64,000 nt of DNA from positions 186,001 through 250,000 of the IMG/VR virus record IMGVR_UViG_3300032242_000723. The stretch is one strand, 5' to 3'. A model generated the notes under the pieces. That model worked only from the letters and a program-made list of their open reading frames with translations. It was not told the origin of the DNA and searched no databases. How positions within the stretch are numbered: the stretch's first letter is position 1; every line of letters starts with the position of its first letter. This document shows positions 40,653 through 60,829 of this stretch, piece by piece. The translations under genes and the position numbers were made by a program.

Positions 40653-41879
40653 ATGGCATATACAATTGTAAAAAGTAATGGTACGGTATTGACCACCATT
40701 GCTGACGGTACGATCAACACTACGAGTACCTCTTTAGGGTTGCCTGGTAGAAACTACGCAGGATATGGTCAATCGCTTGACACTAATCAGGTACATTTGC
40801 TTGAAAATTTCGCAGATGTCACTCCACCTGCTAATCCGCTAAGAGGTCAGCTTTGGTACAACACTAATAGTAGCACATTGTACGTTTGTCCTACTGACGG
40901 ACAATCAAACGGATTAGCTTGGTTAGCATTGACATCGACTTCATCAGGCGGAACGACTACATTCGGTGCTGTTACTGTCACTGGCAACCTAACTGCTAAT
41001 AATATTTCTGCTACTAATAATAGCAACGCAAATGCAATGTCAACTAGCTACCTAACTGTTTCTATTCAAGCTGATATTGGTAATGCAAATGTTACCTCTG
41101 CTAATATAGGAACTTTAAAAACTACTGCAATTACGACAGGTGCAGCAACATCAGGTGGAACACTTACTGGTGTTTGGACTGTTACGGGTTCAGCAGGTGG
41201 TTCAGGTGCGAATGCAGTAGTATTTGATACTGGCGGTATCTATATCAGTAACTCAGCAGGCGCTAACTTATACGGTATCAAGACTGACAAGTACATGTAT
41301 GCGAACGGTGCTCCGATCTCGTTTGCTGGTACATATAGCAACTCAAATGTCGCTTCTTACTTGCCTACTTATAATGGAAACATTCTTACTACACAAACGC
41401 AAGCAATCGTTCTTACTACTGGTGCAAACACTACCGCCGGCAACATTACTGGTAACTGGTCACTCACTGCTGGTTCACGACTCAACGCTACATACGCTGA
41501 CTTGGCCGAACGTTTCGAAGCTGATGAAATCTATTCTGCCGGTACAGTAGTTCAGATTGGTGGTATTAAAGAGATTACTGCTGTTAAGTATGAACTCGCT
41601 GAAGATGTCTTCGGTGTTATCTCTGATAGTGCTGGTTTCGTTATGAACTCTTCAGCAGGAAACAACGACACTCACCCTGCTGTAGCTGTTTCTGGTCGTG
41701 TTCCTGTTAATGTAACTGGTAAAGTAGCTAAAGGTCAACGTCTTGTTAGTGCAGGTGAAGGTGTCGCTCGTGCTGCTAGAGTAGGTGAAGCGACTGCGTT
41801 CAACACAATCGGCAGAGCATTAGAAGCAAAAACCACAGATGGTCTCGGATACGTCGAAGCCTTTGTTACGATTCGTTAA
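40653..41879 (+). CDS. Tail fibre-like protein with C-terminal intramolecular-chaperone-like domain
   Basis: N-terminal LLENFA...P..GQLWY; C-terminal YADLAE.F...GTVV...GRVPV.V.G.V.KG.RLV...IG.AL. Confidence 0.65.
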   Translation: MAYTIVKSNGTVLTTIADGTINTTSTSLGLPGRNYAGYGQSLDTNQVHLLENFADVTPPANPLRGQLWYNTNSSTLYVCPTDGQSNGLAWLALTSTSSGGTTTFGAVTVTGNLTANNISATNNSNANAMSTSYLTVSIQADIGNANVTSANIGTLKTTAITTGAATSGGTLTGVWTVTGSAGGSGANAVVFDTGGIYISNSAGANLYGIKTDKYMYANGAPISFAGTYSNSNVASYLPTYNGNILTTQTQAIVLTTGANTTAGNITGNWSLTAGSRLNATYADLAERFEADEIYSAGTVVQIGGIKEITAVKYELAEDVFGVISDSAGFVMNSSAGNNDTHPAVAVSGRVPVNVTGKVAKGQRLVSAGEGVARAARVGEATAFNTIGRALEAKTTDGLGYVEAFVTIR

Positions 41880-42871: not shown

Positions 42872-42879
42872 TATAAATA
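42872..42879 (+). promoter_or_regulatory. Canonical T4-type late promoter TATAAATA heading the glyco/radical SAM cluster
   Basis: Exact TATAAATA 16 nt upstream of ORF 42896, which has a GAGGA RBS. Confidence 0.75.
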
Positions 42880-43201: not shown

Positions 43202-44013
43202 CTCGCGGAGTACTACTGTTCGCCTTTAACTCTCTCAAATATAACTACTATGAAATGGCATTACACACTGCCAAACGTGCTAATCACTTCTTGGGACTAC
43301 CAGTAACGCTTGTTACTGATGAAGAATCGTATCCAGATGATGAGACATATGTTTGGGATAAGGTGATTAAAGTAGTACCCGATAAAGATAACTTTAGAGA
43401 TTGGGGACAGTGGATCAACAAAGGCAGATACATGGCCTATGATCTTAGCCCATACGATGAGACTATTCTATTAGACGTAGATTACGTTATCAACTCTGAC
43501 AAACTACTGACAACCTTTAACATATATGAAGACTTTGCTTGTCACAATAAGACTAACTTTTTGATGCACCCTGATGCTTCGCAAGAGTTATTGTCAGCAT
43601 ACAGCTATGAGACATTGTGGGCCACTGTGGTTACATTCAAAAAGTCAACTAGGGCAGAGCAAATCTTTAGATCACTAGAAATGGTTCAGAAGAACTATGA
43701 TCACTATGCTAATATACATTCATTCATTGCTGGTGTATACCGTAATGACTATGCACTAACACTTGCGTTACGCATTGTTAACGGACACAGTACTAATCCT
43801 AGTGATGTAATACCATGGGACCTAGTGCATGTCGGTAAGAACACTCAAATCTATGCGAATACCACGGATGAGTTCAATACAGAATATACAGTAATGTTTG
43901 ACAACTGGCAGCGTGGTAAAATTCGCAAAGAGTATATCACTATCAAGGATATGGATTTCCACCTCATGAACAAGGATTTATTTAAGGAGATTATTAATGG
44001 AACTGACGACTAG
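43198..44013 (+). CDS. Glycosyltransferase, GT-A fold (GT8-like)
   Basis: SPYDETILLDVDY (DxD), RND.A motif. Confidence 0.7.
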   Translation: MTRGVLLFAFNSLKYNYYEMALHTAKRANHFLGLPVTLVTDEESYPDDETYVWDKVIKVVPDKDNFRDWGQWINKGRYMAYDLSPYDETILLDVDYVINSDKLLTTFNIYEDFACHNKTNFLMHPDASQELLSAYSYETLWATVVTFKKSTRAEQIFRSLEMVQKNYDHYANIHSFIAGVYRNDYALTLALRIVNGHSTNPSDVIPWDLVHVGKNTQIYANTTDEFNTEYTVMFDNWQRGKIRKEYITIKDMDFHLMNKDLFKEIINGTDD

Positions 44014-44224
44014 TATGTTAAATGTACAACCCTATATTACTGGAAACGCATTTGGCTATTTTAACCCAAGTACTCTTACTACGGCTTTTCCAGATTTTGT
44101 AGGTAAGTATAAGGCGATACCAGTATTTGACCCGATAGAAGCACCGTTCGGTGGGCATATACTAGAGTTTGAAAATAGTGCAGATAAGATGTGGTTTATA
44201 TTAAAGCATGTTAAACATGGATAA
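43997..44224 (+). CDS. Small protein, isolated member of the C-terminal-motif family
   Basis: Ends LEFENSADKMWFILKH, matching the 48-50 kb array motif; overlaps both flanking GT genes. Confidence 0.6.
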   Translation: MELTTSMLNVQPYITGNAFGYFNPSTLTTAFPDFVGKYKAIPVFDPIEAPFGGHILEFENSADKMWFILKHVKHG

Positions 44225-46247: not shown

Positions 46248-46727
46248 ATGAATAACTGGAAAGACTATGTGGGATATCAACCACTAAACGAAGAAGAATT
46301 ACCTAGAGCTTATTATTCCTTAGTTTATACTACTACAACAAATGAAGACGGATCATTAAACGTTTCTACTCGTATCAATACAGTAGCAATAGGCATATCT
46401 GAAATGACGTTGACTGAAAATGAAGTGGGGAAGGCAGTAGAAGATGTACTATCAACATTTCCAAAACGAGAAATCAAAAATATTGTTGAACTACAACGGG
46501 CTAAAAACGAGATTGCTCTTACTACGCGACACACCTTTCCGGATACTAACTTCAATGATGTTTGGTATTATAATGGTCCTGGATCAATCGACAGTGCAAT
46601 TTATGTTATCAGTTATATGGGGCATTATGCAGTTAAAAAGCATGTTGATTTTGAAAAGTATGGTTTTATTGTAACATCTACTCCCACAGCCAGTGAACAA
46701 CCTATCAAGTTTGTACCGCTAGAATAA
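46248..46727 (+). CDS. Hypothetical protein, faint resemblance to gp23 capsid C-terminal motifs
   Basis: RAKNEIALTTR and YNG...DSAI segments. Confidence 0.5.
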   Translation: MNNWKDYVGYQPLNEEELPRAYYSLVYTTTTNEDGSLNVSTRINTVAIGISEMTLTENEVGKAVEDVLSTFPKREIKNIVELQRAKNEIALTTRHTFPDTNFNDVWYYNGPGSIDSAIYVISYMGHYAVKKHVDFEKYGFIVTSTPTASEQPIKFVPLE

Positions 46728-48127
46728 TGTCAAACGAAACCAATAGAATCAAGGATATCCAGATCAGAGTAGAGAACGAGGCTACTCCTACATTCTGTAT
46801 GGCTAAGTGGCACCATGTGACATTATATCTACAAACTGGCGAAACACATTCTTGTTATCACCCACAACCACACAAGATTCCTTTTGCTGAACTCAAAGAT
46901 AATCCTTCTGCATTACACAATACAATGCACAAGAAACTTGAGCGTAAAGAGATGCTTGAAGGCAAGAAGCCAACTGGTTGCGAATATTGCTGGAAGATTG
47001 AAGCACTTGGCAAAGACTATATCTCTGATCGTCATATTAGAAACAGTTCTATCTTTACTGAAGAACGCTTTGAACAGACGGTCAGAGGACCCTGGGACCA
47101 GAACATCAACCCAGAATATCTTGAGATTAATTTTGGTAACGAGTGTAACTTTCAATGTGGTTACTGTCATCCAAAGTACTCTACTAAGTTCTATAAAGAG
47201 ATTGAGAAGTTCGGCCCAGTAGAAAGTGTAAAGAATCATCGCTGCGATATTGACTGGATGAAGTTATATCAGCGTGAAGAAGAAAATCCATATGTAGATG
47301 CATTCTGGAAGTGGTGGCCTGAACTTAGGCAGACACTAAACATCATGCGTGTTACTGGTGGCGAGCCAACACTGCACAAGAGTACATGGCAACTGTTAGA
47401 CAAGATTGAGGCAGACCCCATGCCCTGGTTAGAACTTAACATCAATAGCAATCTTGGTACAAAGAACATATTGATTGATCGTCTTGCAACTAAGGTAAAG
47501 AAGTTCTGTGACGAGGATAAGATTCAATCGTTCAAGTTGTTCACATCGCTTGACACCTGGGGACCTCGTGCCGAGTACATTCGCAATGGTCTTGACCTTG
47601 AACTATGGGAACAGAACTTCCACACATATCTGACAAAGAGTGACAGTCCAATCACATTCATGGTCACGTTCAATATCTTCTCAGTAACGACATTCAAATC
47701 ACTGTTAGAGAAGTTCTTAGAGTGGCGTAGACAGTATGGCTGGTACGAGCACAAGACAAGCGACAAGCATAGAGTACGCTTTGACACCCCATACCTTCGT
47801 GATCCATTACAATATGATATGAACATCCTTCCCAAAGAAGAGTACATGCCCTATATGCATGACGCATTGAAGTTCATGGAAGACAACCTAGACGATAATA
47901 GACACGACGCATTTACCACGATTGAGTACGAAAAGTTCAAAAGAGTGGTTGACTATATGGCAGAAACCGTTTACAGTGAAGACAAGTTAGTTGAAGGTCG
48001 TAGAGATTTCTACAACTGGTTCAATGAGTTGGATGATCGCAGAGAGACAGATTTCTTGTCAGTCTTTCCAGAAATGTTGGAGTTCTATAGGCTATGTCAA
48101 CAAACGAACTTATCAAACCCGATGTAA
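46727..48127 (+). CDS. Radical SAM enzyme with N-terminal twitch-like Fe-S domain
   Basis: CNFQCGYC, TGGEP; N-terminal FC..KW...SC.H...CEYC. Confidence 0.9.
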   Translation: MSNETNRIKDIQIRVENEATPTFCMAKWHHVTLYLQTGETHSCYHPQPHKIPFAELKDNPSALHNTMHKKLERKEMLEGKKPTGCEYCWKIEALGKDYISDRHIRNSSIFTEERFEQTVRGPWDQNINPEYLEINFGNECNFQCGYCHPKYSTKFYKEIEKFGPVESVKNHRCDIDWMKLYQREEENPYVDAFWKWWPELRQTLNIMRVTGGEPTLHKSTWQLLDKIEADPMPWLELNINSNLGTKNILIDRLATKVKKFCDEDKIQSFKLFTSLDTWGPRAEYIRNGLDLELWEQNFHTYLTKSDSPITFMVTFNIFSVTTFKSLLEKFLEWRRQYGWYEHKTSDKHRVRFDTPYLRDPLQYDMNILPKEEYMPYMHDALKFMEDNLDDNRHDAFTTIEYEKFKRVVDYMAETVYSEDKLVEGRRDFYNWFNELDDRRETDFLSVFPEMLEFYRLCQQTNLSNPM

Positions 48128-48357
48128 AAGCTGGCTGGTCTATGGATTACCAGATGATCCGTTTGGACAACTTCGCACGACGAGGATGGTCTAAGGATGC
48201 GAACGGTGTAACATACAGTGTCAGTGCGAGAGTGAGGCCTGAGATTGAACGCTGGGTTAGACAACAAAATATTGATATGTATGAAATATTAGATAATCGT
48301 TACATTTGGTTCAAGGACCCTGAACTTGAAACTCTCTTCCTGTTGAGATGGTCATGA
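48094..48357 (+). CDS. Array small protein 1
   Basis: Ends FKDPELETLFLLRWS. Confidence 0.7.
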   Translation: MSTNELIKPDVKAGWSMDYQMIRLDNFARRGWSKDANGVTYSVSARVRPEIERWVRQQNIDMYEILDNRYIWFKDPELETLFLLRWS

Positions 48358-48623
48358 TGGCGCTTTGTGAGACCGAGGCCGACGAGATCATTCGCACCGC
48401 CGCCGTCGATATATTCGGTGACGCCGGAAATCTGGACCACTATATTGATCGAGGTTGGCACAAAAAGACAAAAAGTACCTATATTATAGCTGCCCTTTTT
48501 CCTGAGATTAATGAGTGGATCAAGCAACAAAATCCTGACATGATTGAAGAAGTTGTAGAGGAATATTGTTATCGTTTCAAGAACCCTGAACTTGAAACCC
48601 TCTTTCTGTTAAGGTGGGGATGA
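48354..48623 (+). CDS. Array small protein 2
   Basis: ATGA-coupled; ends FKNPELETLFLLRWG. Confidence 0.75.
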   Translation: MMALCETEADEIIRTAAVDIFGDAGNLDHYIDRGWHKKTKSTYIIAALFPEINEWIKQQNPDMIEEVVEEYCYRFKNPELETLFLLRWG

Positions 48624-48850
48624 CTATAAAAAGACTACCATACGAAGTCATACTTGAAGACTTCCACGGGTCCGCACATGCTGAAGTATGGTGTGAAGAA
48701 CAGTTTGGTAAACGCTGGGGTCCATCTAGTGATCGTTTTGGTAACTGGGCGGCCCTTAGTGTCCCACGCCTCCTTTCAGCGCCTACTAAAATCAAGTTTC
48801 TCTTCGCAAATGAAAAGGACGCTATATTCTTTAAGTTGAGATGGTCATGA
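48620..48850 (+). CDS. Array small protein 3
   Basis: ATGA-coupled; ends FANEKDAIFFKLRWS. Confidence 0.75.
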   Translation: MTIKRLPYEVILEDFHGSAHAEVWCEEQFGKRWGPSSDRFGNWAALSVPRLLSAPTKIKFLFANEKDAIFFKLRWS

Positions 48851-49113
48851 AGTTTAAGTTACGAGAAAATACAAATCATGTAACCGATTTCGTGACCCAG
48901 GAACTAAAATTAAGATCCATATGGGAAAGAGGTTACGCATTTTGTGGAACGGCTTTGGGCAGGTACAAGGTTTACCAGCTAAGAAATGACGTTGCTGAAT
49001 GGGTGCATCAGCAAGATCCTACTAAGTGGACACGGTATGAAGTAGAGTACTCGCACGATGTTTACCACTTTAGCGATGAACTCATGATGCTACTAATATT
49101 AAGATGGTCATGA
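48847..49113 (+). CDS. Array small protein 4
   Basis: ATGA-coupled; ends FSDELMMLLILRWS. Confidence 0.75.
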   Translation: MKFKLRENTNHVTDFVTQELKLRSIWERGYAFCGTALGRYKVYQLRNDVAEWVHQQDPTKWTRYEVEYSHDVYHFSDELMMLLILRWS

Positions 49114-49361
49114 GTACAATAGCACAAAACAATAAGTTCATTCTTTTTCGCAAAAAGTTTCAGCGTCCCAAAGGCGGCAGCAAGAACATGTTTGTTGTCT
49201 CGCTATTGCTGCCTTATTATTATACCCAAGATGAACGATCAGAAGTACTAAACACTTTGGTATCCTTTAACGGACGAGAGTGGGGAAGTTTGTCTGCTGT
49301 ATTTCGCAAGAAAGTAGATGCTGAAAAGGCATGGATATTTATAACGTTGAAATGGGGATGA
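49110..49361 (+). CDS. Array small protein 5
   Basis: ATGA-coupled; ends FRKKVDAEKAWIFITLKWG. Confidence 0.75.
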   Translation: MSTIAQNNKFILFRKKFQRPKGGSKNMFVVSLLLPYYYTQDERSEVLNTLVSFNGREWGSLSAVFRKKVDAEKAWIFITLKWG

Positions 49362-49603
49362 CTAAGAAATATTTCATTCCTATTAGCGATAGTGAAAAAC
49401 GGTTCCGTCCCGGAAACTTTCCTTCTGGTACCAAATTCTATCTTACGATTGAAAGTTGGAGAAACTTTGTCAAGGCATGTGAGTATGATGACAAAGTAAT
49501 CAAAGTTTGGTTAGAAACCGAATATAACGCTAAGCTAATAAATGATGTTATTGTCTTTGAGGATGAAAAAGATAAAATCATGTGGTTATTGAGGTGGGGA
49601 TGA
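49358..49603 (+). CDS. Array small protein 6
   Basis: ATGA-coupled; ends FEDEKDKIMWLLRWG. Confidence 0.75.
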   Translation: MTKKYFIPISDSEKRFRPGNFPSGTKFYLTIESWRNFVKACEYDDKVIKVWLETEYNAKLINDVIVFEDEKDKIMWLLRWG

Positions 49604-49830
49604 GTGTCACATATATAACTGATGAAGACATTACTGATAAGCTTTGGGACGAGTATGAGGCGGGCTGGCCAGTAATGCCGGGCTTTACAGAATGGTTGCG
49701 TGATGTTAGAATCCCATATGCTGTTACGATAAAGACTGTTCATTCCGGCGATATCAATGGCTTTACCTATGGATGTAGCATCAGATTCAAAGAGGAGAAA
49801 GACTTGACTTACTTTCTGTTGACGATATGA
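49600..49830 (+). CDS. Array small protein 7
   Basis: ATGA-coupled; ends FKEEKDLTYFLLTI. Confidence 0.75.
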   Translation: MSVTYITDEDITDKLWDEYEAGWPVMPGFTEWLRDVRIPYAVTIKTVHSGDINGFTYGCSIRFKEEKDLTYFLLTI

Positions 49831-50039
49831 GCATAATCTACACTGTAGATCCTGATCTTGTTACTCGTCTTTGGGAAGAATGGCTTTGGTTACCACAAAA
49901 GCTACACTTTGATAACTGGATGCGTGAAGTCAGGGTTCCATATGCCGATGATGTTAATATACATATAAGCTCCTTAATTGACTCTCAAATAATATTCAAA
50001 GAGGAGAAAGACTTGACATACTTTCTGCTGACGCTTTAA
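49827..50039 (+). CDS. Array small protein 8 (paralogue of 7)
   Basis: ATGA-coupled; ends FKEEKDLTYFLLTL. Confidence 0.75.
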   Translation: MSIIYTVDPDLVTRLWEEWLWLPQKLHFDNWMREVRVPYADDVNIHISSLIDSQIIFKEEKDLTYFLLTL

Positions 50040-50060
50040 ATAATATGATATATATTATGT

Positions 50061-50300
50061 ATGAGATTAGTCTTTGATCCAGTACCTGATAATCCATTAG
50101 TACTACAGTATACACTATTACATCCTAATGGGGTCCGTAGTGTAACTGGACTTAGAGGTCCATATACTGATCACATAGAAAAATGGTGCAAAGAACAAAA
50201 TTGCGGGACCTTTCTTCAGTACGAGAATCCCGGATTCATGTACCATGTAAAATTTGAGAATACTGAAAAGTTAGCGTTCTTTCTACTGAGGTGGGGATGA
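50061..50300 (+). CDS. Array small protein 9
   Basis: Ends FENTEKLAFFLLRWG; TTTAAATA at 50035-50042 upstream. Confidence 0.75.
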   Translation: MRLVFDPVPDNPLVLQYTLLHPNGVRSVTGLRGPYTDHIEKWCKEQNCGTFLQYENPGFMYHVKFENTEKLAFFLLRWG

Positions 50301-50482
50301 GCGTAAAGCTTTACACTGTCTCAGGTGTCATAATGCTTGACTGGATAGAAAACGAGATCAGAGAAAAAGAGCCGGGCAACTATAGGGTAGTAGCAGTGCA
50401 GAAAGCTAATAAAGTATATGAATATTGGCTAGAGTTTGACGATCCTGCAGAAGAAACGTTTTGGAGATTGAAATACCAATGA
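50297..50482 (+). CDS. Array small protein 10
   Basis: ATGA-coupled; ends FDDPAEETFWRLKYQ; its stop overlaps the next radical SAM start. Confidence 0.7.
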   Translation: MSVKLYTVSGVIMLDWIENEIREKEPGNYRVVAVQKANKVYEYWLEFDDPAEETFWRLKYQ

Positions 50483-51747
50483 ATATAGATAAAAATCATC
50501 TGTTAAACGAGAGTAAAGAATTCTGCATGATGCCATGGATACATATGCATACCACGCCATCTGGTGCTAGTGCTCCTTGCTGTATAGGCAGATCAATTGC
50601 AAGTACAGATGGCATGGGCAATGCAGCTAATCATAGTCTACTAGAACTTGTCAACTCAGAAAAAATGAATCAACTACGATTAGATATGTTGTCCGGAGTT
50701 CGCAACAATGAATGTAACAGTTGCCATGTTCAAGAAGAGCACGGGCAAAAATCTCACCGAATACATATGAATCAGCAACGCGATCATTTCTTTGACGAAG
50801 CAGTATTAAACACTAATGTAGACGGGTCACTAACTAACTTCAAGATGCGAGAGTTTGATATGCGTTTCTCTAACCTATGCAACTTTAAATGCCGAACCTG
50901 TACTCAAGAATATAGTTCAGCATGGGAACAAGAGAACAAAATACACGACAAACTGCATTATAGACGTATCACTAGAAACAATAACAAACAACTATTACAA
51001 GAAGTAATCGATCATATTCCCCATATGGAACATGCATACTTTGCAGGTGGTGAACCACTGATCATGGAAGAGCATTATATCTTATTAGAAGAGATGATAC
51101 GTCAACAACGCACTGACATTCAATTGAGATATAGCACTAACTTTAGTAACCTCAAGTTCAAGAATAAAGATTTGCTTGGTTTATGGAAACAGTTTGATAA
51201 GCATATATTAGTTTTTGCTAGTATTGATCACGTAGGTGAACGTGCAGAATATATACGAGCAGGTACAGATTGGGGAAAAGTAGAAGAAAATTACATACAT
51301 GCATCTGCTATTCCCAATATTACAATGAGCATCAATGCAGTATTAAGCGTATTTAATTACTTAACCTTTGACAAGTTCTATCAACACTTAATTGACAAAA
51401 AAATGTATCTACCTACCGGATTTATCAATACTGTATACTTCATGCAGGATCCTTCATATCTAACATGTCACTTACTTCCTACGGATGATTTACGAAATAA
51501 AGGTAAAGAAAGTATGAGATTCACAGTTGACCTTATGAAGAGTAATGGATTTGATAATAGACATACCGATCCTTTAGAGTTATCACATGCTTGGCTAGAC
51601 TCAAGTAACACATGGAACAATAGGTATGATCATGAAATTACTATAGGTGAGAAGTTTAAGCAAGAGATATTACGATTAGATAAGATTAGGGGTCAGGACT
51701 TCACTAAAGTATTCCCTGAATTAGCAGTATTATTGGATACTAAATGA
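50479..51747 (+). CDS. Radical SAM enzyme, N-terminal twitch domain
   Basis: FCMMPW...PCC...CNSC, CNFKCRTC, FAGGEP; start MNIDKN at 50479. Confidence 0.9.
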   Translation: MNIDKNHLLNESKEFCMMPWIHMHTTPSGASAPCCIGRSIASTDGMGNAANHSLLELVNSEKMNQLRLDMLSGVRNNECNSCHVQEEHGQKSHRIHMNQQRDHFFDEAVLNTNVDGSLTNFKMREFDMRFSNLCNFKCRTCTQEYSSAWEQENKIHDKLHYRRITRNNNKQLLQEVIDHIPHMEHAYFAGGEPLIMEEHYILLEEMIRQQRTDIQLRYSTNFSNLKFKNKDLLGLWKQFDKHILVFASIDHVGERAEYIRAGTDWGKVEENYIHASAIPNITMSINAVLSVFNYLTFDKFYQHLIDKKMYLPTGFINTVYFMQDPSYLTCHLLPTDDLRNKGKESMRFTVDLMKSNGFDNRHTDPLELSHAWLDSSNTWNNRYDHEITIGEKFKQEILRLDKIRGQDFTKVFPELAVLLDTK

Positions 51748-52976
51748 ATATAGATAAGAATCATCTATTGAACGAGAGCAAAGAGTTCTGCATGTTTCCT
51801 TGGCTACACTTAAATGTAACGCCAAAAGGTGATATCTATCCATGTTGTTCTAATGACTATTCTGATCCTTTTGGTAATACCAAAGAAACATCACTTAAAG
51901 AAGCATTTAACAATAAGAGAATGAAGCAACTTCGTCTTGACATGTTAAGTGGTAAAAAGAGTAAAATTTGCGACTTCTGTTATAAGCATGAAGACTCTGG
52001 TCCGCATAGCTTTCGTACCTATAGTAAAGAGATGTTTGCCCATCGTTTTGATGAGACCGTACCGACTACTCTTGAAGACGGTACAGTGCCCGACTTCAAC
52101 ATGCACTACTTTGATATACGCTTTTCTAATATCTGCAACTTTAAATGCCGCACATGTGGCTCAGAGTTTTCTAGTAAGTGGGGAGAAGAAATGCGTAAGC
52201 ACCACGACCCAAAGCATCCTGTAGTTATTCATGCTGACATTAAAGGCAATCTATTACAAGAAGTACTCGATCAAGTAGATAACATCGATCTTGCATACTT
52301 TGCGGGTGGCGAACCATTGATCACTGATGAGCATTATGTTATGCTGGAAGAGATGATCAGAAAAGGCCGCACGGATATCACACTTAGATATAATACAAAT
52401 GCGAGCAATATCAAGTATAAGAAGCATGATATCCTAGAGTTATGGAAACATTTCAAGAAGGTAGAATTATCCTGCTCAATAGATCATTATGGTGAACGTG
52501 CTGAGTGGCTACGTAAAGGAACTGACTGGGGAAAGATAGAAGAAAATCTATTATTATTCCGTGAGCTAGAACAAGTTTCATTTCAGATGAATACTGTCTT
52601 CTCTATCTTTAACTACAGTACTATCGGTGAGTTCTATCAATATCTAAAAGACAAGAATATTGTTCGTAAAGATGATTGGTATCACAGTCTTTATCTCGCG
52701 GTTAATCCTGAATACTATTGCGCCAAATCATTGCCGAAAGAACTTAAGATAGAAGCAAAGATCAAAGCGTTAGCATGGGCAGAATCTAATGCAAATGATA
52801 GTACATGTTTACCAAGACTTATTACTGATGCAGTGAACTTCGCAAATGAATCAGATGATTGGGCTAAGATAAAAAAAGACATGCTACAGCACACTAACTC
52901 TATTGATCGTATCAGAGATGAAAACTTTTGGTCCGTGTTTCCCGAGTTAAATAAATTAAGAGATTTGGAGGAATAA
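51744..52976 (+). CDS. Radical SAM enzyme, N-terminal twitch domain (tandem paralogue)
   Basis: FCMFPW...PCC...CDFC, CNFKCRTC, FAGGEP. Confidence 0.9.
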   Translation: MNIDKNHLLNESKEFCMFPWLHLNVTPKGDIYPCCSNDYSDPFGNTKETSLKEAFNNKRMKQLRLDMLSGKKSKICDFCYKHEDSGPHSFRTYSKEMFAHRFDETVPTTLEDGTVPDFNMHYFDIRFSNICNFKCRTCGSEFSSKWGEEMRKHHDPKHPVVIHADIKGNLLQEVLDQVDNIDLAYFAGGEPLITDEHYVMLEEMIRKGRTDITLRYNTNASNIKYKKHDILELWKHFKKVELSCSIDHYGERAEWLRKGTDWGKIEENLLLFRELEQVSFQMNTVFSIFNYSTIGEFYQYLKDKNIVRKDDWYHSLYLAVNPEYYCAKSLPKELKIEAKIKALAWAESNANDSTCLPRLITDAVNFANESDDWAKIKKDMLQHTNSIDRIRDENFWSVFPELNKLRDLEE

Positions 52977-52977
52977 A

Positions 52978-53262
52978 ATGGCAGTAGTTGATAACACTAA
53001 TAGTGAAAATCTAGACTATGTTGACTATAACATGGGCAACAAGGTTAAGAACATTATGGAAAAGTATGTAGGAAATATGCTTACAGAAGAAACAGCAGAT
53101 CAAGTAATGACAGACCTCATTGAGGAGTTCGGAAATGATATCGAAGCCCAGGTAGTTATTGACGATGAGATCAATGATATCGAAGTTATCATCCGCGATT
53201 CAAACGGTGTGTTGATGAAGTGTTCATCGCTTAAACTGTTTGCAGAAAAACTGAGCGTATGA
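52978..53262 (+). CDS. Acidic hypothetical protein
   Basis: Strong GGAGG RBS. Confidence 0.65.
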   Translation: MAVVDNTNSENLDYVDYNMGNKVKNIMEKYVGNMLTEETADQVMTDLIEEFGNDIEAQVVIDDEINDIEVIIRDSNGVLMKCSSLKLFAEKLSV

Positions 53263-53429
53263 CGGAAGTAACGGATCCCGTTCAACGGTTGATCGACTCT
53301 AACGAACGATTGCTTATCGAGTTAAAGAAACGTTATAAGGGCAATACTGCCGAAGACGTTAAAAAGATTTTGCAACATGAAATCGATGAGATGACCGACA
53401 AGATTAAAAGATTAAAGGCAAAACTATGA
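53259..53429 (+). CDS. 56-aa coiled-coil protein (not in ORF track)
   Basis: MTEVTDPVQRLIDSNERLLIELKKRYKG...KIKRLKAKL; ATGA overlaps on both sides. Confidence 0.6.
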   Translation: MTEVTDPVQRLIDSNERLLIELKKRYKGNTAEDVKKILQHEIDEMTDKIKRLKAKL

Positions 53430-53593
53430 AGATTGAATTTGATAGACAGTTTATTAGAGATATGATTAGCACATTAGGTGTTAACCACGCTATTTCAGAA
53501 ATGACGTTATCATTTCAGGCATTGCTTGATACTGTAATTGAAGAAATCGAAAAAGAAGTCCAAGAAGAGATCAAGGCAAGACGTGACCGATAA
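53426..53593 (+). CDS. 55-aa helical protein (not in ORF track)
   Basis: MKIEFDRQFIRDMISTLG...EEIKARRDR; fills the gap up to the next radical SAM gene. Confidence 0.6.
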   Translation: MKIEFDRQFIRDMISTLGVNHAISEMTLSFQALLDTVIEEIEKEVQEEIKARRDR

Positions 53594-54857
53594 AGCAACG
53601 ATTACTGCTCTAGTAGAAAGCGGTAAGCACTTCTGTGTATTACCCTGGGTACACTTCCATGCCTGGCCAGATTCAAGAGTCATGCCTTGCTGCGTTGCAG
53701 ACAGTGACAAGCCAGTATCGTATCTTAAGCCTGAAGAGTCTATCATCGAAATGATGAATAGTGACGACTACAAGAAAATGCGTACTGAGATGCTCAAGGA
53801 TGAGCCGGTTGAAGCATGTAAGCGTTGTTATGATCTTGAAATATTAGGAAATTGGACGATGCGGCAATCTCACAATGCACGTCGTGGACTAGAATATGTA
53901 GATTATATAGCAGATGTAACACAAGAAGACGGTGCTCTTTCTGAGTTCGAAATGAAATATATGGACATTCGTTTCAGTAATCTATGCAACATGAAGTGTC
54001 GGTCATGCGGTCCAAGCTGTTCAAGTCAAATGGCACAAGAATATTCTGACAAGCATGGTAAAGAAAAGTTCGAGAAGTACTTTCCTAATCAAAAGATCAT
54101 TGTTAACAACAATGAAGATCAGCAGTTTATGCTCAAGCTTAAGCCATACTTAGCAGACGTTACAGAAGTATACTTTGCAGGCGGCGAGATTGTTATTACC
54201 GCAGAACACTATGAGTGTCTTGACTACTGGATCGAGAATGGTTTAACTGATCAGATCGAACTAAACTATACAACAAACTTCTCAACTCTAAGATATAAGA
54301 AGAATAAAGATTTGATTGAATACTGGAAGAAGTTTCCGAACATTCAAATTTGGGCGTCATTAGATGCACACGGTGATCTAGCTGAGTGTATGCGTAAAGG
54401 TACTGACTGGCCTAAGATAGTAGCGAACATGCGAGAACTTAAAGAAAAGCTTCCGCATGTAAAGTTTCAGATCACGCCTACTATCTCTATTTGGAATATC
54501 TTTCACTTTGCTGATTTCTTTGACTATATGATTGAGAACGGGTTTATTGACACCACTACTAGTCCTAGATTCAATCTTGCAACATCGCCCTGGTATGCTA
54601 ATATCATGATTCTTCCAAATAATGTAAAGCGTGATCTCATCGCGTTATATAGAAAATATCAAATAAAGTACAAAAAGAATGCTGAATTGTGTAATGGATT
54701 TAAAGTCATCGCAAAAAATTTAGATTCTGGCGAAGAGAACAAAGGTGGAATACTAGAGTTCAAAGCATACAATGATGAACTAGATACCTTTCGTAACGAG
54801 AAGTTTGAAGACATCGTGCCAGAGATCAAGGAAGTATACAAGTGGGCCATGAGCTAG
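53583..54857 (+). CDS. Radical SAM enzyme, N-terminal twitch domain
   Basis: FCVLPW...PCC...CKRC, CNMKCRSC, FAGGE; probable GTG start at 53583. Confidence 0.9.
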   Translation: MTDKATITALVESGKHFCVLPWVHFHAWPDSRVMPCCVADSDKPVSYLKPEESIIEMMNSDDYKKMRTEMLKDEPVEACKRCYDLEILGNWTMRQSHNARRGLEYVDYIADVTQEDGALSEFEMKYMDIRFSNLCNMKCRSCGPSCSSQMAQEYSDKHGKEKFEKYFPNQKIIVNNNEDQQFMLKLKPYLADVTEVYFAGGEIVITAEHYECLDYWIENGLTDQIELNYTTNFSTLRYKKNKDLIEYWKKFPNIQIWASLDAHGDLAECMRKGTDWPKIVANMRELKEKLPHVKFQITPTISIWNIFHFADFFDYMIENGFIDTTTSPRFNLATSPWYANIMILPNNVKRDLIALYRKYQIKYKKNAELCNGFKVIAKNLDSGEENKGGILEFKAYNDELDTFRNEKFEDIVPEIKEVYKWAMS

Positions 54858-55825
54858 TAGCGATTGAGACGCCGGAACCTTATCTTGCTATAACCTGGCA
54901 GGTGAACAACTATTGCAACTATAGCTGTAGCTATTGTAATCCAGGCAACTGGGCCGGTGCCAATCCTAATAACGGCAATCTTGATCTTTATATTCAAAAT
55001 CTCTCTGCAATCGTAGAGAAGTATAAACAAGTAGGCTATAAGCATTTCAAGTTCTTCTTTAGTGGCGGCGAACCCACAGCCTGGAGAAACTTTATTCCTA
55101 TCTGTGAATGGATATATAAAGAACTTCCACAAGCAACACTAGCAGTCAACACAAATCTAAGCAGACCTAAAGCATGGTGGGAGAAACATCATTATCTATT
55201 TGATGATATCGTTGCAAGCTTCCACGTAGAGTATGCAAACAAAGATCGCTATAAAGAGAATAGTATCTATCTATGTGATAAGGTCAACTATCTGTCATCT
55301 AAGATGCTACTACATGATGATCGATTCTGGGAGGTTGTAGAGTATGCTGAAGAGTTAAAGACAGTAATGCCAAACTATTTCATAGAGTGGACGCCACTGT
55401 ATGATGAGTTGTCTAATGATGCTAAGCCTTGGGAATACAATGACGACAAGAAAACAGAGTTTCTATCTACTCATAACATAGAATCAGTGCAGACATTACC
55501 GAAGCCAAACAAACGTACAGAAAACACCGTTAGCTATAATAGATATGATACCTGCACAGACAAGTATAGTATTCCTACTAACTCTAACGAGATCATTGTA
55601 GAGCGACAGAACTTCTTTACTGGATGGAAATGTCAAGTAGGTGACTGTATATTCATCAGTCCAGTAGGAAATATTACTCTTGCTAGCTGCGGTGCAACAA
55701 AGGATATGGGACACATACTAAATGACATCAGTAAAGTAGGTCCACTAGAGATTACATGTCCTAAACAACATTGTTATTGCGGTACGGATATCATTATTCC
55801 CAAATACAAGGTAGAGCAATCATGA
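54842..55825 (+). CDS. Radical SAM enzyme with C-terminal twitch-like cysteine cluster
   Basis: CNYSCSYC, SGGEP, C-terminal C...SC...CPKQHCYC. Confidence 0.9.
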   Translation: MGHELVAIETPEPYLAITWQVNNYCNYSCSYCNPGNWAGANPNNGNLDLYIQNLSAIVEKYKQVGYKHFKFFFSGGEPTAWRNFIPICEWIYKELPQATLAVNTNLSRPKAWWEKHHYLFDDIVASFHVEYANKDRYKENSIYLCDKVNYLSSKMLLHDDRFWEVVEYAEELKTVMPNYFIEWTPLYDELSNDAKPWEYNDDKKTEFLSTHNIESVQTLPKPNKRTENTVSYNRYDTCTDKYSIPTNSNEIIVERQNFFTGWKCQVGDCIFISPVGNITLASCGATKDMGHILNDISKVGPLEITCPKQHCYCGTDIIIPKYKVEQS

Positions 55826-58854: not shown

Positions 58855-59648
58855 TCGACTTAAGTAAGTATAATCGTATCTTTACTTTTGGATGTAGCTT
58901 TACGAACTGGTATTATCCAACTTGGGCTAATATTGTTCATCAATGTGCACCTGATACTACTATGATTAATTTAGGTCAAGGCGGGGGAGGAAACTCTTTT
59001 ATTGCAAATAGAATGACACAGGCCAATAGAACCTATAACTTCTGTGAAACTGATCTAGTTATGGTAATGTGGTCTACTCTATGCAGAGAAGATAGATATT
59101 ATAATCTTAGATGGAGAACGGTAGGCAATGTGTTCTCGCAAAGTGAATATGATGAGAAGTTCGTAAAGAGTTACTGTGATCCAATCGGTTATCTGATCAA
59201 GGACCTATCAACTATTGACCTTGCAACATCATATATGAAGAATCTACCATGCGATTACTTTGACATGTTGTCGGTTCCATTCAATCATCAGATTATTGAT
59301 GAAAAAGATGAAGTGTACAAAGATGTTATACATACATATAAAGATTTGATATCACAATTTCCACCTTCTATGTATGATTTAATGGGATCATATTTCGGTA
59401 TACTAAAGTATGCTATGGACGACGGTAAAATAATGGAAGACTATCATCCGAATCCAAAAACTTTTGTTGACTATCTACAGAAGATAAAATTTCCGGTAAC
59501 TCCTGCAGCAATTGTATATGCAGAAGATGCATATAGCAAAGTGCAAACAGTTAAACATTATTTTTGGTTCGCTGCGACATTCCCAGAAATACAACATGCA
59601 TCTTCTAACTATTATACATATCAACATGAATGGAAAATCAAAGAATGA
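58851..59648 (+). CDS. SGNH/GDSL-like protein (close paralogue of 56937)
   Basis: FGCSF, GGGN, NRMTQANRTYNFCETDLV shared, DYHP. Confidence 0.55.
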   Translation: MIDLSKYNRIFTFGCSFTNWYYPTWANIVHQCAPDTTMINLGQGGGGNSFIANRMTQANRTYNFCETDLVMVMWSTLCREDRYYNLRWRTVGNVFSQSEYDEKFVKSYCDPIGYLIKDLSTIDLATSYMKNLPCDYFDMLSVPFNHQIIDEKDEVYKDVIHTYKDLISQFPPSMYDLMGSYFGILKYAMDDGKIMEDYHPNPKTFVDYLQKIKFPVTPAAIVYAEDAYSKVQTVKHYFWFAATFPEIQHASSNYYTYQHEWKIKE

Positions 59649-60829
59649 CTAAAGTAGCAATGATTGGTGTAGGAAAGCTAGGTCAAGACTGTGCAGAGAT
59701 CATGGCACAACAGTACGATGTCGTAGGCTATGACGTAGAGGTAAGAACACCTTCGTTTCCTATGCGTTATACTATACAAGAAGCCGTACAAGATAGAGAC
59801 ATTATCTTTATCGCTGCACCCACTCCACATGACCCTATGTACGGTGGAGAGACACCTACTAGCCATCTACCCAATAAAGACTTTGACTATACTATTGTCA
59901 AGGATATTCTTAGCGTAGTCAACCAGTTTGTTAACAAAGATCAGCTTGTTGTCCTTATTAGCACAGTATTGCCAGGCACTATTCGTAGACAGTTAAAGCA
60001 TTATATTACCAACAGTAGATTTATCTATAACCCATACTTGATCGCAATGGGCACGATCAAATATGACATGGTGAACCCTGAAATGATTATTATCGGGACT
60101 GAAGATGGCTCGGCAACAGGTGACGCTAAAGAACTAATTGATTTCTATCAACCACTCATGCAGAACGATCCACGTATCGAGATCGGAACCTGGGATGAAG
60201 CTGAAGCTATCAAGATATTCTATAATACATTTATCTCTGCTAAAGTCGCAATTGTTAACATGATACAAGATGTTGCCGAACGCAATGGTAATATGTGCGT
60301 TGATGTTGTCACCGGTGCATTAGAACGTTCAACATATCGTATCACGGGTCCAGCTTATATGAAGGCAGGTATGGGCGATGGTGGTGCATGTCATCCCCGT
60401 GATAATATCGCACTACGACATCTTGCTGAAGAGCTTGATCTCGGCTACGATTTGTTTGATAGTATCATGCGAGCAAGAGAAGTGCAAGCCGAAAATATGG
60501 CTATGACTATTCTTAACTACGGAAAGAATGTGACTATCGTGGGCAAAGCTTATAAGCCCGGAGTCCATTATACTAACGGGTCGTCTTCTATGCTTGTGGG
60601 ATATTATATTGAACAACAAGGTGGCACAGTAAACTACTACGATGAACACACTGGTGATACTGATATGAAAGCCGACACTACTGATGTATACTTGATCGGT
60701 TATTGGGATGACTATGTAGAGAAGCTAACGTTCCCAATCAATAGCACAGTAATAGACCCTTGGCGTAAGATGACATCTGAACAACATAAGGGCAAGATCG
60801 TCCATTACGGTAATACTAGGAAGATATAA
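59645..60829 (+). CDS. ugd: UDP-glucose/GDP-mannose 6-dehydrogenase
   Basis: GVGKLG Rossmann motif, PTP, STV.PGT, YNP, AE.IK...N.F...K, GGAC.PRD, AYK. Confidence 0.9.
   Translation: MTKVAMIGVGKLGQDCAEIMAQQYDVVGYDVEVRTPSFPMRYTIQEAVQDRDIIFIAAPTPHDPMYGGETPTSHLPNKDFDYTIVKDILSVVNQFVNKDQLVVLISTVLPGTIRRQLKHYITNSRFIYNPYLIAMGTIKYDMVNPEMIIIGTEDGSATGDAKELIDFYQPLMQNDPRIEIGTWDEAEAIKIFYNTFISAKVAIVNMIQDVAERNGNMCVDVVTGALERSTYRITGPAYMKAGMGDGGACHPRDNIALRHLAEELDLGYDLFDSIMRAREVQAENMAMTILNYGKNVTIVGKAYKPGVHYTNGSSSMLVGYYIEQQGGTVNYYDEHTGDTDMKADTTDVYLIGYWDDYVEKLTFPINSTVIDPWRKMTSEQHKGKIVHYGNTRKI

What the first reader, a model, noticed from the sequence alone, without database searches (positions are those of the whole stretch)
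48094..50482. Plug-and-play array of ten small proteins with variable N-termini and a shared C-terminal motif, inside a radical SAM operon
Seen: ten ORFs of about 60-90 aa. Most are unrelated at the N-terminus, but all end in a ~15-aa motif close to F-x-[DN]-x-x-[DE]-x-x-x-F-x-L-[RK]-W-[GS]. In nine of ten, the last sense codon ends in A (TCA, GGA, ATA, CAA), so the TGA stop carries the ATG of the next gene. Seven end in TGGTCATGA or TGGGGATGA, and the LRWG codons create a GAGGTG/AAGGTG SD-like run. DNA differences between the tails of ORFs 1 and 2 are mostly synonymous, so selection is on the peptide. Inference: a diversifying cassette system in which the tail is a docking or targeting module for a common partner and also a self-contained translational coupler. 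Cassettes could then be added, duplicated or swapped by recombination at the tail without silencing downstream genes. Possible roles are anti-defence or host-takeover proteins, or virion cargo. I know of no name for this system.
Basis: partly seen in the sequence, partly recalled or inferred. Interest (0 to 1): 0.85.

Follow-up and report, generated by a model that had tools for sequence, protein, structure and literature searches.

The report
Tandem small-protein family with self-coupling tails
Ten back-to-back small genes in an uncultured giant phage belong to an unnamed, fast-evolving protein family whose last few codons also carry the ribosome-binding site and start codon of the next gene, so whole genes can be gained or lost without switching off their neighbours; what the proteins do is unknown.

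Summary
Ten co-directional ORFs of 61-89 aa (48094-50482) share a C-terminal motif. Nine of the ten stops form an ATGA overlap with the next start.

The shared part is not a 15-aa tag. It is a ~50-55 aa beta-beta-alpha-beta-beta-alpha domain, and the "tail" is its last strand and helix. Only the N-terminal additions differ between members. No Pfam, PHROG, NCBIfam, PDB or cultured-phage relative was found.

The family is much larger than this window. I found about 206 unique members in 37 loci, with arrays of up to 25 genes in environmental jumbo phages. A few members lie in proteobacterial prophages or integrative islands.

The link to radical SAM genes looks incidental. Fifteen related loci keep the radical SAM cluster with no array, and other arrays lie beside T4-like replication genes.

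The translational-coupler idea is well supported. The tail Arg codon is AGG in 79% of coupled genes, against 35% of uncoupled genes and 7% elsewhere in the same genes.

Cassette turnover is real. The same site holds 0, 1, 8, 10 or 16 genes in relatives. Two indels between near-identical contigs have endpoints inside tail repeats. dN/dS is 0.22-0.59 for the small genes and 0.03-0.11 for the flanking enzymes.

Function is unknown. My guess is host- or defence-binding proteins.

The parts
48094..48357 (+). Member 1 (87 aa), tail ...FKDPELETLFLLRWS. Its start lies 34 nt inside the 3' end of the upstream radical SAM gene. Its stop overlaps the next start (TGGTCATGA).
   Evidence: profile E 1e-15 to 6e-12; ortholog in L028 at 60% identity
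48354..48623 (+). Member 2 (89 aa), a paralog of member 1 (52% identity). AlphaFold2 gives an N-terminal helical hairpin followed by the beta-beta-alpha-beta-beta-alpha core. Tail ...LLRWG; junction AAGGTGGGGATGA.
   Evidence: (pLDDT 78.7)
48620..48850 (+). Member 3 (76 aa). Its tail ...FANEKDAIFFKLRWS is the closest of the ten to the family consensus.
   Evidence: E 2e-14 with a profile built mostly from other loci
48847..49113 (+). Member 4 (88 aa), tail ...FSDELMMLLILRWS. Its L028 ortholog is 84% identical but sits at a different rank in that array.
   Evidence: dN/dS 0.27
49110..49361 (+). Member 5 (83 aa), divergent, tail ...VDAEKAWIFITLKWG. It is the only member with a clear ortholog in all three large arrays (71% in L028, 40% in L002).
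   Evidence: marginal profile score
49358..49603 (+). Member 6 (81 aa), tail ...FEDEKDKIMWLLRWG; junction TTGAGGTGGGGATGA.
   Evidence: (80% to L028)
49600..49830 (+). Member 7 (76 aa), tail ...FKEEKDLTYFLLTI; ATATGA junction.
49827..50039 (+). Member 8 (70 aa), a paralog of member 7 (44% identity). Tail ...FKEEKDLTYFLLTL. It is the only member with a TAA stop, and a 21-nt gap follows.
50061..50300 (+). Member 9 (79 aa), tail ...FENTEKLAFFLLRWG. AlphaFold2 gives strands at 2-8, 11-20 and 26-28, a helix at 34-46, strands at 49-52 and 62-65, and a helix at 68-78.
   Evidence: (pLDDT 84.4)
50297..50482 (+). Member 10 (61 aa, the shortest), tail ...FDDPAEETFWRLKYQ. Its stop overlaps the ATG (50479) of the next radical SAM gene.
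43997..44224 (+). Probable distant 11th member (75 aa), tail ...LEFENSADKMWFILKHVKHG. It stands alone between two conserved genes. Orthologs sit at the same place in L002 and L028.
   Evidence: E ~5e-4, tail region only
46727..48127 (+). Context, upstream flank: radical SAM gene 1 (N-terminal twitch family NF033640). It is 98% identical in L028. The start of whichever gene follows lies 34 nt inside its 3' end in many relatives.
50479..51747 (+). Context, downstream flank: radical SAM gene 2 (NF033640). It is ATGA-coupled to member 10, and ATGA-coupled to radical SAM gene 3 (51744-52976).

Best explanation
The ten ORFs are real genes of an undescribed paralogous family of small, soluble, single-domain proteins.

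Fold. The core is ~50-55 aa with beta-beta-alpha-beta-beta-alpha topology. The residues W (helix 1), F (last strand) and F-x-L-[RK]-W (last helix) are near-invariant. N-terminal additions vary between members.

Setting. The family forms co-directional tandem arrays in environmental jumbo phages that carry T4-like replication and recombination genes. These arrays are accessory inserts between conserved genes. Here the insert lies between two radical SAM genes, with no required link to them.

Coupling. Each gene ends Leu-Arg-Trp-X-stop, typically written TTG AGG TGG NNA TGA. These codons spell a Shine-Dalgarno sequence (GAGGTG, complementary to the 16S rRNA 3' end), 5 nt of spacer, and the ATG of the next gene overlapping the stop. 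Each gene therefore carries the translation start signals for its downstream neighbour. A ribosome that terminates at one gene can reinitiate on the next.

Turnover. The 20-25 nt tail and junction is repeated at every gene boundary. Recombination between two tails deletes or duplicates whole genes in register and leaves the operon translatable. This gives accordion-like turnover.

Function. The proteins evolve 5-10 times faster than their flanks but remain under purifying selection. I infer, without having shown it, that they are binders of variable host or defence targets built on a conserved scaffold.

Shown: family membership, fold prediction, codon bias, copy-number turnover, indel endpoints and dN/dS. 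Inferred: actual coupling in vivo, the recombination mechanism and the biological role.
For: - Family and domain: alignments and profile. AlphaFold2 gives pLDDT 84.4 for ORF9 and 78.7 for ORF2, both with the same C-terminal core.
- Real genes: dN/dS is 0.22-0.59 for eight window/L028 ortholog pairs, against 0.03-0.11 for flanking enzymes (0.27 for one non-family flank ORF, g46248).
- Size of family: 260 member ORFs, 206 unique, in 37 loci, 258 of 260 on the query strand. There are up to 25 members in the 12-kb locus L040.
- Coupling: ATGA at 111/206 junctions, GTGA or TTGA at 25, TAATG-type at 24, longer overlaps at 22. Exactly one residue follows L[RKT]W in 134/160 members.
- Codon bias: tail Arg is AGG in 85/133, against 50/586 elsewhere in the same genes (p = 2e-40). 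Tail Leu is TTG or CTG in 109/160, against 177/643 (p = 6e-21). Taking one gene per 50% cluster, AGG is 54/68 when a start overlaps and 8/23 when none does (p = 2e-4).
- SD use in this genome: 18/29 other genes in the window have an SD-like motif.
- Turnover: the site holds 0, 1, 8, 10 or 16 genes in relatives. Flanks are 94-98% identical where orthologous small genes are 38-84%.
- Indel endpoints lie inside tail repeats.
- Other arrays lie beside a UvsW-like helicase, topoisomerase II subunits and a primase-like gene.
Against: - No expression, ribosome-profiling or binding data exist. The phage is uncultured.
- In this window only 3 of 9 coupled junctions carry AGG. The rest have the weaker AGA, AAA or ACG.
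- Only 2-4 clean indel events were found. Of eight distinct indels between close relatives, four have a boundary within 6 nt of a family stop codon, and three of those carry a 21-23 nt repeat.
- Synonymous-site identity in tails is hardly higher within arrays (0.573) than between loci (0.532). Tail recombination is therefore not frequent enough to homogenise the tails.
- 162/190 members have their closest relative in another locus. Most paralogs are old, and recent local duplication is the minority.
- The proposed function is a guess from evolutionary behaviour alone.
Confidence: 0.55

Rival explanations
1. The small proteins are substrates (RiPP-like precursors) or dedicated partner or chaperone proteins of the flanking radical SAM/SPASM-twitch enzymes. 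The conserved tail would be the recognition element.
For: The array is embedded between radical SAM genes with twitch/SPASM domains. The same insertion site is used in four related phages. A conserved Trp sits near the C-terminus, and some radical SAM peptide maturases act on Trp (my own knowledge).
Against: - Fifteen related loci keep the radical SAM cluster with no small gene between the radical SAM genes.
- The contig of L011 has the cluster without an array, but carries an array about 50 kb away beside a helicase.
- Other arrays sit between topoisomerase or primase-like genes, or in prophages and islands where the examined flanks show no radical SAM gene.
- The conserved region is a confidently folded domain, not a leader plus variable core.
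Confidence: 0.05
2. They are virion cargo or internal proteins, and the shared C-terminal element is a packaging signal. This would be analogous to the capsid-targeting sequence of T4 internal proteins.
For: The array lies in a long + strand block downstream of tail-fibre-like genes (Peptidase_G2 domain, a 6605-aa ORF). One T4 late-promoter-like TATAAATA lies upstream of the block, at 42872. T4 internal proteins are likewise variable proteins that share a short targeting sequence (PMC3012670, PMC9026906).
Against: - The shared element is a structural core, not a terminal peptide.
- There is no conserved N-terminal sequence or protease site.
- Many arrays sit among replication genes, and members occur in P4-like islands.
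- Twenty-five different cargo proteins in one phage seems unlikely.
Confidence: 0.07
3. They are immunity, antitoxin or superinfection-exclusion proteins. Tandem arrays of small paralogs would protect against a diverse set of toxins, as in polymorphic-toxin immunity arrays.
For: Tandem arrays of small, fast-diverging paralogs on mobile elements are typical of immunity gene arrays (PMC3113570, PMC3482391). Members occur in a P4-type integrase island and in a prophage.
Against: No toxin-like gene was seen next to the arrays in the loci examined. No match to any Pfam immunity family. Lytic jumbo phages have no obvious need for 10-25 immunity genes.
Confidence: 0.1
4. The repeated element is mainly a nucleotide-level signal (a translation or recombination cassette), and the peptides are incidental by-products with no function of their own.
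For: There is strong nucleotide-level selection on the last four codons. The residue after Trp varies freely (S, G, A, L, T, I, V, E, Q), and where a TGA stop follows, its codon usually ends in A (82 of 97).
Against: - dN/dS is well below 1 over whole genes.
- A conserved Trp-helix lies 30-45 residues upstream of the tail.
- The fold predictions are confident.
- The motif persists where extra residues follow the Trp and no start overlaps, as in FKLRWGGSP and FKLRWSDYL.
- Tail synonymous sites are largely randomised.
Confidence: 0.03

Closest known systems
PeSL-mediated modular shuffling in the hyperplastic regions of T4-like phages (Arbiol et al. 2010, PMC2839356; Comeau et al. 2014, PMC4122927)
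   Same: Accessory small genes are clustered between conserved core genes. A short motif repeated at gene boundaries serves as the point of recombination, which produces insertions, deletions and replacements between close relatives. The motif also carries expression signals, so each module stays expressed.
   Different: PeSLs are intergenic promoter-plus-terminator cassettes, and the genes they flank are unrelated. Here the repeat lies inside the coding sequence, in the last ~7 codons of a conserved domain. It carries translation signals (SD plus overlapping start) rather than transcription signals, and the shuffled genes are paralogs of one family.
Translational coupling by termination-reinitiation at ATGA/TGATG overlaps (Huber et al. 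2019, PMC6728339; PMC10666635; PMC12548453)
   Same: A 4-nt or 1-nt stop/start overlap with an SD motif inside the 3' end of the upstream gene. This arrangement was shown experimentally to couple translation tightly in E. coli and Haloferax volcanii.
   Different: In those cases it is a feature of individual gene pairs. Here the same SD-plus-overlap is built into the conserved C-terminal codons of a whole gene family and is iterated up to ~25 times in series. Coupling has not been tested here.
Multigene families and genomic accordions of large DNA viruses (for example poxvirus K3L amplification and ASFV MGF families, from my own knowledge; T4 tifA amplification, bioRxiv 10.1101/2022.04.14.488369)
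   Same: Tandem paralogs with rapid copy-number change and fast sequence divergence. These are thought to reflect host-virus arms races.
   Different: Those families have known or suspected host targets, and expansion occurs by recombination at flanking sequence. Here the target is unknown, and the recombination substrate is the family's own coding tail.
T4 internal proteins with a capsid targeting sequence (PMC3012670, PMC9026906)
   Same: Several otherwise different small proteins share one short conserved element and sit in a variable locus.
   Different: The T4 element is an N-terminal ~10-residue peptide that is cleaved after packaging. Here the shared part is a ~50-aa C-terminal folded domain, with no sign of cleavage.
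RiPP precursor arrays beside radical SAM/SPASM maturases
   Same: Multiple small ORFs in tandem next to SPASM/twitch radical SAM genes.
   Different: RiPP precursors have a conserved leader (or follower) and a short variable core, and they co-occur with their maturase. Here the conserved part is a folded domain, and the co-occurrence fails in both directions.

Membership tests
RiPP precursor peptides of radical SAM/SPASM maturases | Precursor genes co-occur with the maturase genes across related genomes | tested here: not met
   Fifteen related loci have the radical SAM cluster without any member. Arrays occur away from radical SAM genes.
RiPP precursor peptides of radical SAM/SPASM maturases | A conserved recognition leader or follower plus a short hypervariable core, largely unstructured | tested here: not met
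   The conserved region is a ~50-aa domain predicted with pLDDT 79-84. The tail is its last strand and helix.
RiPP precursor peptides of radical SAM/SPASM maturases | Post-translational modification by the neighbouring enzyme | not testable with these tools
   Needs co-expression and mass spectrometry.
Translationally coupled (termination-reinitiation) gene pairs | Stop and start codons overlap (ATGA or TGATG) | tested here: met
   9/10 in the window. Family-wide, 111 ATGA, 25 GTGA/TTGA and 24 one-nt overlaps out of 206.
Translationally coupled (termination-reinitiation) gene pairs | An SD motif inside the upstream gene at functional spacing, under selection | tested here: met
   GAGG lies 5 nt before the ATG. 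AGG is used in 54/68 coupled tails, 8/23 uncoupled tails and 39/527 background codons. In the window itself it is strong at 3 junctions only.
Translationally coupled (termination-reinitiation) gene pairs | Downstream translation depends on upstream translation | not testable with these tools
   Needs reporter fusions or ribosome profiling.
T4-like hyperplastic-region modules shuffled via repeated boundary motifs (PeSL-type) | Accessory genes sit between conserved core genes and differ between close relatives by whole-gene indels | tested here: met
T4-like hyperplastic-region modules shuffled via repeated boundary motifs (PeSL-type) | Indel endpoints fall in the repeated boundary motif | tested here: met
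   L046/L048: a 24-nt direct repeat flanks a one-gene indel. L044/L047: the crossover lies within the tail codons. There are few events, and four of eight distinct indels do not end at a tail.
T4-like hyperplastic-region modules shuffled via repeated boundary motifs (PeSL-type) | The boundary motif is an intergenic early promoter plus stem-loop terminator | tested here: not met
   Genes overlap by 4 nt, so there is no intergenic space. Promoter-like and terminator-like sites are not above the shuffled expectation.
T4 internal proteins (capsid targeting sequence) | A conserved N-terminal targeting peptide with a prohead-protease cleavage site | tested here: not met
   The N-termini are the variable part, and no shared N-terminal motif exists.
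Any curated protein family or solved fold | A significant sequence or structure match | tested here: not met
   - Pfam, PHROGs and NCBIfam: nothing for the ten window members, 63 diverse members or ten bacterial members.
- PDB profile search: 0 hits.
- Foldseek against PDB: best E 0.1 and 0.9.
- BFVD: only uncharacterised proteins of uncultured phages.
- Source names: all 'hypothetical'.
Polymorphic-toxin immunity gene arrays | Arrays lie downstream of a toxin gene with a variable C-terminal toxin domain | tested here: inconclusive
   No toxin-like neighbour was found in the ~10 loci whose flanks were scanned. This was not a systematic survey.

The most novel reading that the evidence does not exclude
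This gene family has made its own conserved C-terminal codons into a portable expression-and-recombination module. Leu-Arg-Trp-X-stop encodes part of the protein's core helix, the Shine-Dalgarno sequence and start codon of the next gene, and a 20-25 nt homology used for in-register gain and loss of genes. It would be a coding-sequence counterpart of the intergenic PeSL cassettes of T4-like phages. It would let arrays of up to ~25 arms-race genes expand and contract inside operons without polar effects.
Probability: 0.45. Interest if true: 0.75.

Novelty: new variant of a known kind. Interest (0 to 1): 0.6.

Why it matters
- It defines a sizeable, unnamed protein family with a fold that matches no solved structure. 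There are ~206 unique members in the loci I could reach, and arrays of 10-25 genes. The family is concentrated in environmental jumbo phages and is also present in proteobacterial prophages or islands.
- It gives a clear statistical case of triple use of the same codons: protein core, ribosome-binding site plus start codon, and recombination homology. This is a concrete mechanism by which phages could grow and shrink accessory gene arrays inside essential operons.
- The fast divergence and turnover mark these genes as candidates for host-interaction or counter-defence functions.
- The prophage copies in cultured Caballeronia, Burkholderia and Microvirga strains offer an experimental entry point that the uncultured jumbo phages do not.

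Tried and rejected
- Nucleotide search of the region against 50,697 phage records: no match.
- tblastn of two members against the same records at E <= 1: no match.
- Pfam, PHROGs and NCBIfam on window, diverse and bacterial members: nothing.
- PDB sequence profile: 0 hits.
- Foldseek against PDB: recurrent but insignificant hits to LAGLIDADG endonucleases and S24e for ORF9, and to ETS/winged-helix domains for ORF2. I rejected these as topology-level noise.
- The first profile search of 1.84 billion representative proteins found only 27 hits. This badly underestimates the family, because the profile was built from the ten window genes only.
- The search for related loci with the ten-gene alignment failed because no stretch was conserved enough. 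The same happened for genome contigs. I worked around this with a sub-alignment and a degenerate DNA pattern. The pattern gave 18 hits, about the number I estimated for chance, but 7 loci contain true members by profile.
- Gene conversion of tails: not supported.
- Promoter and terminator scans: not above chance.
- Ralstonia phage RsoM2USA shares the radical SAM gene and its neighbour. No family member was found in the ~220 kb fetched (1-199,400 and 208,342-227,697, about 64% of the genome). The remaining third was not fetched.
- The word-indexed homolog searches returned few hits, all unnamed.
- Literature searches found no description of the family.

Full report
**What is there.** The window comes from a 333-kb IMG/VR contig, IMGVR_UViG_3300032242_000723. 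Between 48094 and 50482 the + strand carries ten consecutive ORFs of 61-89 aa. Eight of the nine internal junctions are 4-nt ATGA overlaps. The tenth gene overlaps the ATG (50479) of the next radical SAM gene in the same way. Seven genes end in TGGTCATGA or TGGGGATGA. Only ORF8 ends in TAA, followed by a 21-nt gap. ATGA junctions are common in this genome (8 of 32 other + strand genes) but are enriched in the array (9 of 10; Fisher p = 4e-4).

**The shared part is a domain, not a tag.** Aligning the ten genes, and then 38 and 63 relatives, shows a second conserved element 30-45 residues upstream of the tail. It is a helix I-x-x-W-[CL]-x-x-[NQ]. In a 192-member alignment the informative columns are:
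- W, 0.99 (first helix)
- F, 0.91 (last strand)
- E, 0.54 and D, 0.64 (helix cap)
- F, 0.91; L, 0.97; R, 0.73; W, 0.92 (last helix)

AlphaFold2 with these alignments gives confident models. ORF9 has pLDDT 84.4, with strands at 2-8, 11-20 and 26-28, a helix at 34-46, strands at 49-52 and 62-65, and a helix at 68-78. ORF2 has pLDDT 78.7, with an N-terminal helical hairpin (9-21, 24-33) followed by beta-beta-alpha-beta-beta-alpha at 35-88. What varies is the N-terminal addition (nothing, an extra strand, or a helical hairpin) and the loops.

**No known relative.**
- Pfam, PHROGs and NCBIfam find nothing for the window genes, 63 diverse members or ten bacterial members.
- A PDB profile search finds nothing.
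- Foldseek against PDB has best E values of 0.1 and 0.9.
- BFVD returns only uncharacterised proteins of uncultured phages, best TM 0.70.
- tblastn against 50,697 phage records finds nothing.
- All source names are "hypothetical".

**Surroundings.**
- The flanks are four paralogs of the N-terminal twitch radical SAM family NF033640 (46727-48127, 50479-51747, 51744-52976, 53538-54857) and a fifth radical SAM gene (54842-55825). A UDP-glucose dehydrogenase-like gene and a methyltransferase-like gene lie further on.
- Upstream are tail-fibre-like genes, including a 6605-aa ORF.
- A gp46/SbcC-like gene is closest to Pseudomonas jumbo phage PA5oct (41%). A structural protein resembles one from Klebsiella phage RaK2.
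- Radical SAM gene 1 has a 34%-identical homolog in Ralstonia jumbo phage RsoM2USA.

**The radical SAM link is not obligatory.** A scan of IMG/VR with radical SAM gene 3 gave 24 loci. The gap between radical SAM gene 1 and the next radical SAM gene holds:
- 10 members in the window,
- 8 small genes in L002, seven of them family members (also recovered as L025 to L027),
- 1 in L006,
- none in 15 further loci, where the radical SAM genes abut.

A closer relative found through a homolog (L028) has 16 members at the same site. The contig of L011 has the cluster without an array, but carries a six-member array about 50 kb away. That array lies beside a UvsW-like helicase, a PhyH-type dioxygenase and an exonuclease. 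Other arrays lie between topoisomerase II subunits (L057), beside a helicase (L042) and near a Toprim gene (L055). These are the accessory gaps between core T4-like genes.

**Size and spread of the family.** A peptide-pattern scan of IMG/VR (D[AM][ITM]xFKL[RT]W) returned 29 loci, many from contigs of 110-436 kb. An iterated profile found 260 member ORFs, 206 of them unique, and 258 of 260 lie on the query strand. There are up to 25 in the 12-kb locus L040, 19 in L059, and 12-13 in L055 and L061. A degenerate DNA pattern in GTDB genomes hit seven loci with true members: Caballeronia temeraria, Burkholderia guangdongensis, two Microvirga species, a Methylobacterium, a Sphingobium MAG and a proteobacterial MAG. 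The Caballeronia copy is 99% identical to one on a 39-kb IMG/VR contig whose identifier points to an isolate-genome record, so it is probably a prophage. In the Sphingobium locus, three overlapping members plus two more lie between a DUF3987 gene (a replication-type gene, from my own knowledge) and a P4-type integrase. There the tail often carries a few extra residues after the Trp.

**The tail as a translational coupler.** Across the 206 unique members:
- Junction types: 111 ATGA, 25 GTGA or TTGA, 24 one-nt overlaps and 22 longer overlaps.
- Exactly one residue follows L[RKT]W in 134 of 160 members. That residue varies freely, and where a TGA stop follows, its codon usually ends in A (82 of 97).
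- The tail Arg codon is AGG in 85/133 members, against 50/586 elsewhere in the same genes and 152/2073 in large ORFs of the same loci (p = 2e-40).
- The tail Leu codon is TTG or CTG in 109/160, against 177/643 (p = 6e-21).

With one gene per 50%-identity cluster, AGG is used in 54/68 tails that overlap a start. It is used in 8/23 tails that do not, and in 39/527 background codons. TTG AGG TGG spells GAGGTGG, which is complementary to the 3' end of 16S rRNA (established knowledge), 5 nt before the ATG. So the nucleotides are selected in addition to the peptide, and that selection tracks the presence of a coupled downstream start. This fits SD-assisted termination-reinitiation, which was shown experimentally for ATGA pairs in E. 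coli (PMC6728339). In the window itself the effect is only partly visible: 3 AGG, 3 AGA, 2 AAA and 2 ACG.

**Turnover and selection.** Between the window and L028, radical SAM gene 1 is 98% identical and other flanking genes are 81-96% (68% for the small ORF g46248). Orthologous small genes are only 38-84% identical. dN/dS is 0.22-0.59 for the small genes, against 0.03-0.11 for the flanking enzymes (0.27 for g46248), so the small genes are functional but evolve 5-10 times faster than the flanking enzymes. Gene order is collinear except that members 4 and 5 are swapped. L028 has six to eight extra members, and the window has an extra 1/2 duplication. L002 shares only one clear ortholog. Most members (162 of 190) have their nearest relative in another locus, so the paralogs are mostly old.

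**Recombination at tails.** L046 and L048 are ~96% identical. They differ by exactly one 222-nt gene flanked by the 24-nt direct repeat TTTATGTTGAGATGGGGATGAAAC, which is the tail plus the junction. L044 and L047 differ by a 469-nt, two-gene block whose crossover lies within ATGTT..TT[GA]AGGTGG. Of eight distinct indels between close relatives, four have a boundary within 6 nt of a family stop codon, and three of those have 21-23 nt of overlap. Tails are not homogenised: identical-codon frequency at identical residues is 0.573 within arrays and 0.532 between loci. Tail recombination therefore adds and removes genes occasionally. It does not act as ongoing gene conversion.

**Interpretation.** The best-supported picture is an accessory multigene family in the hyperplastic gaps of jumbo phages that carry T4-like replication genes. 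Its conserved C-terminal codons serve three purposes: the protein core, the translation signals for the next gene, and a short homology for in-register gene gain and loss. The nearest described mechanism is PeSL-mediated modular shuffling in T4-like phages (PMC2839356, PMC4122927). In that case the repeated boundary element is an intergenic promoter-terminator. Here it is coding sequence and acts at the level of translation.

The biological role is not established. Fast divergence, copy-number flux, a mildly acidic median pI of 5.8 and a conserved hydrophobic scaffold with variable surfaces suggest binders of host or defence factors. That is inference only. I consider RiPP-substrate and virion-cargo readings unlikely, for the reasons given under the rival explanations.

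Noticed in passing
window 46727-55825 (and L002 to L018): A cluster of four paralogous N-terminal-twitch radical SAM genes (NF033640) plus a fifth radical SAM gene. A UDP-glucose dehydrogenase-like gene (59630-60829) and a methyltransferase-like gene (60829-61446) follow. The cluster is conserved in about 20 jumbo phage contigs, with the number of twitch paralogs varying from 2 to 4. Its function is unknown. A paper notes T4-like marine viral genomes with up to 12 radical SAM genes (PMC5332604).
   Followed up: partly
window 20023-39840 (+): A single 6605-aa ORF lies just upstream of tail-fibre-like genes; the gene at 40653-41879 has a Peptidase_G2 domain.
   Followed up: no
window 50479-50530 and 51744-51795: Radical SAM genes 2 and 3 share an identical 17-residue N-terminus (MNIDKNHLLNESKEFCM). 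46 of 51 nt are identical, although the two proteins are otherwise diverged paralogs. This may be a local conversion or a constrained start region.
   Followed up: partly
window 48094-48127; L002 7175, L003 8742, L005 8317, L006 8495, L017 8661, L028 5777: The gene after radical SAM gene 1 starts at an ATG 34 nt inside that gene's 3' end in many relatives. This holds whether the following gene is a small family member or another radical SAM gene. The array appears to have been inserted behind a conserved overlapping start.
   Followed up: partly
window 42872-42879 (+): The only + strand TATAAATA (T4 late-promoter consensus) in the window lies ~17 nt upstream of the gene at 42896, which opens the gene block that contains the array. 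The count is below chance for the window as a whole, so this is only a hint of late expression.
   Followed up: no
L002/L025 (L025 4426-5091 +, 6039-6554 -): Two HNH_3 homing-endonuclease-like genes are inserted between conserved genes just upstream of radical SAM gene 1 in the L002 lineage. They are absent from the window.
   Followed up: no
L083 (RsoM2USA 175,363-199,895 and 184,325-185,998): Ralstonia phage RsoM2USA has long tandem runs of ~190-210-aa genes (about 30 copies, on both strands) and a run of seven 75-97-aa genes. None matches the family profile. They may be an independent example of tandem gene families in a related jumbo phage.
   Followed up: no
L003 11232-11420 and L006 4118-4324: A different small ORF (tail ...EFIFKNKPT[NT]EKYEWPE...) sits at different genome positions in two related phages. 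It may be another mobile small gene.
   Followed up: no
window 2564-4642 (-): A gp46/SbcC-like recombination nuclease subunit is 41% identical to that of Pseudomonas jumbo phage PA5oct. This places the phage near the PA5oct/RaK2/RsoM2USA group of jumbo phages.
   Followed up: partly
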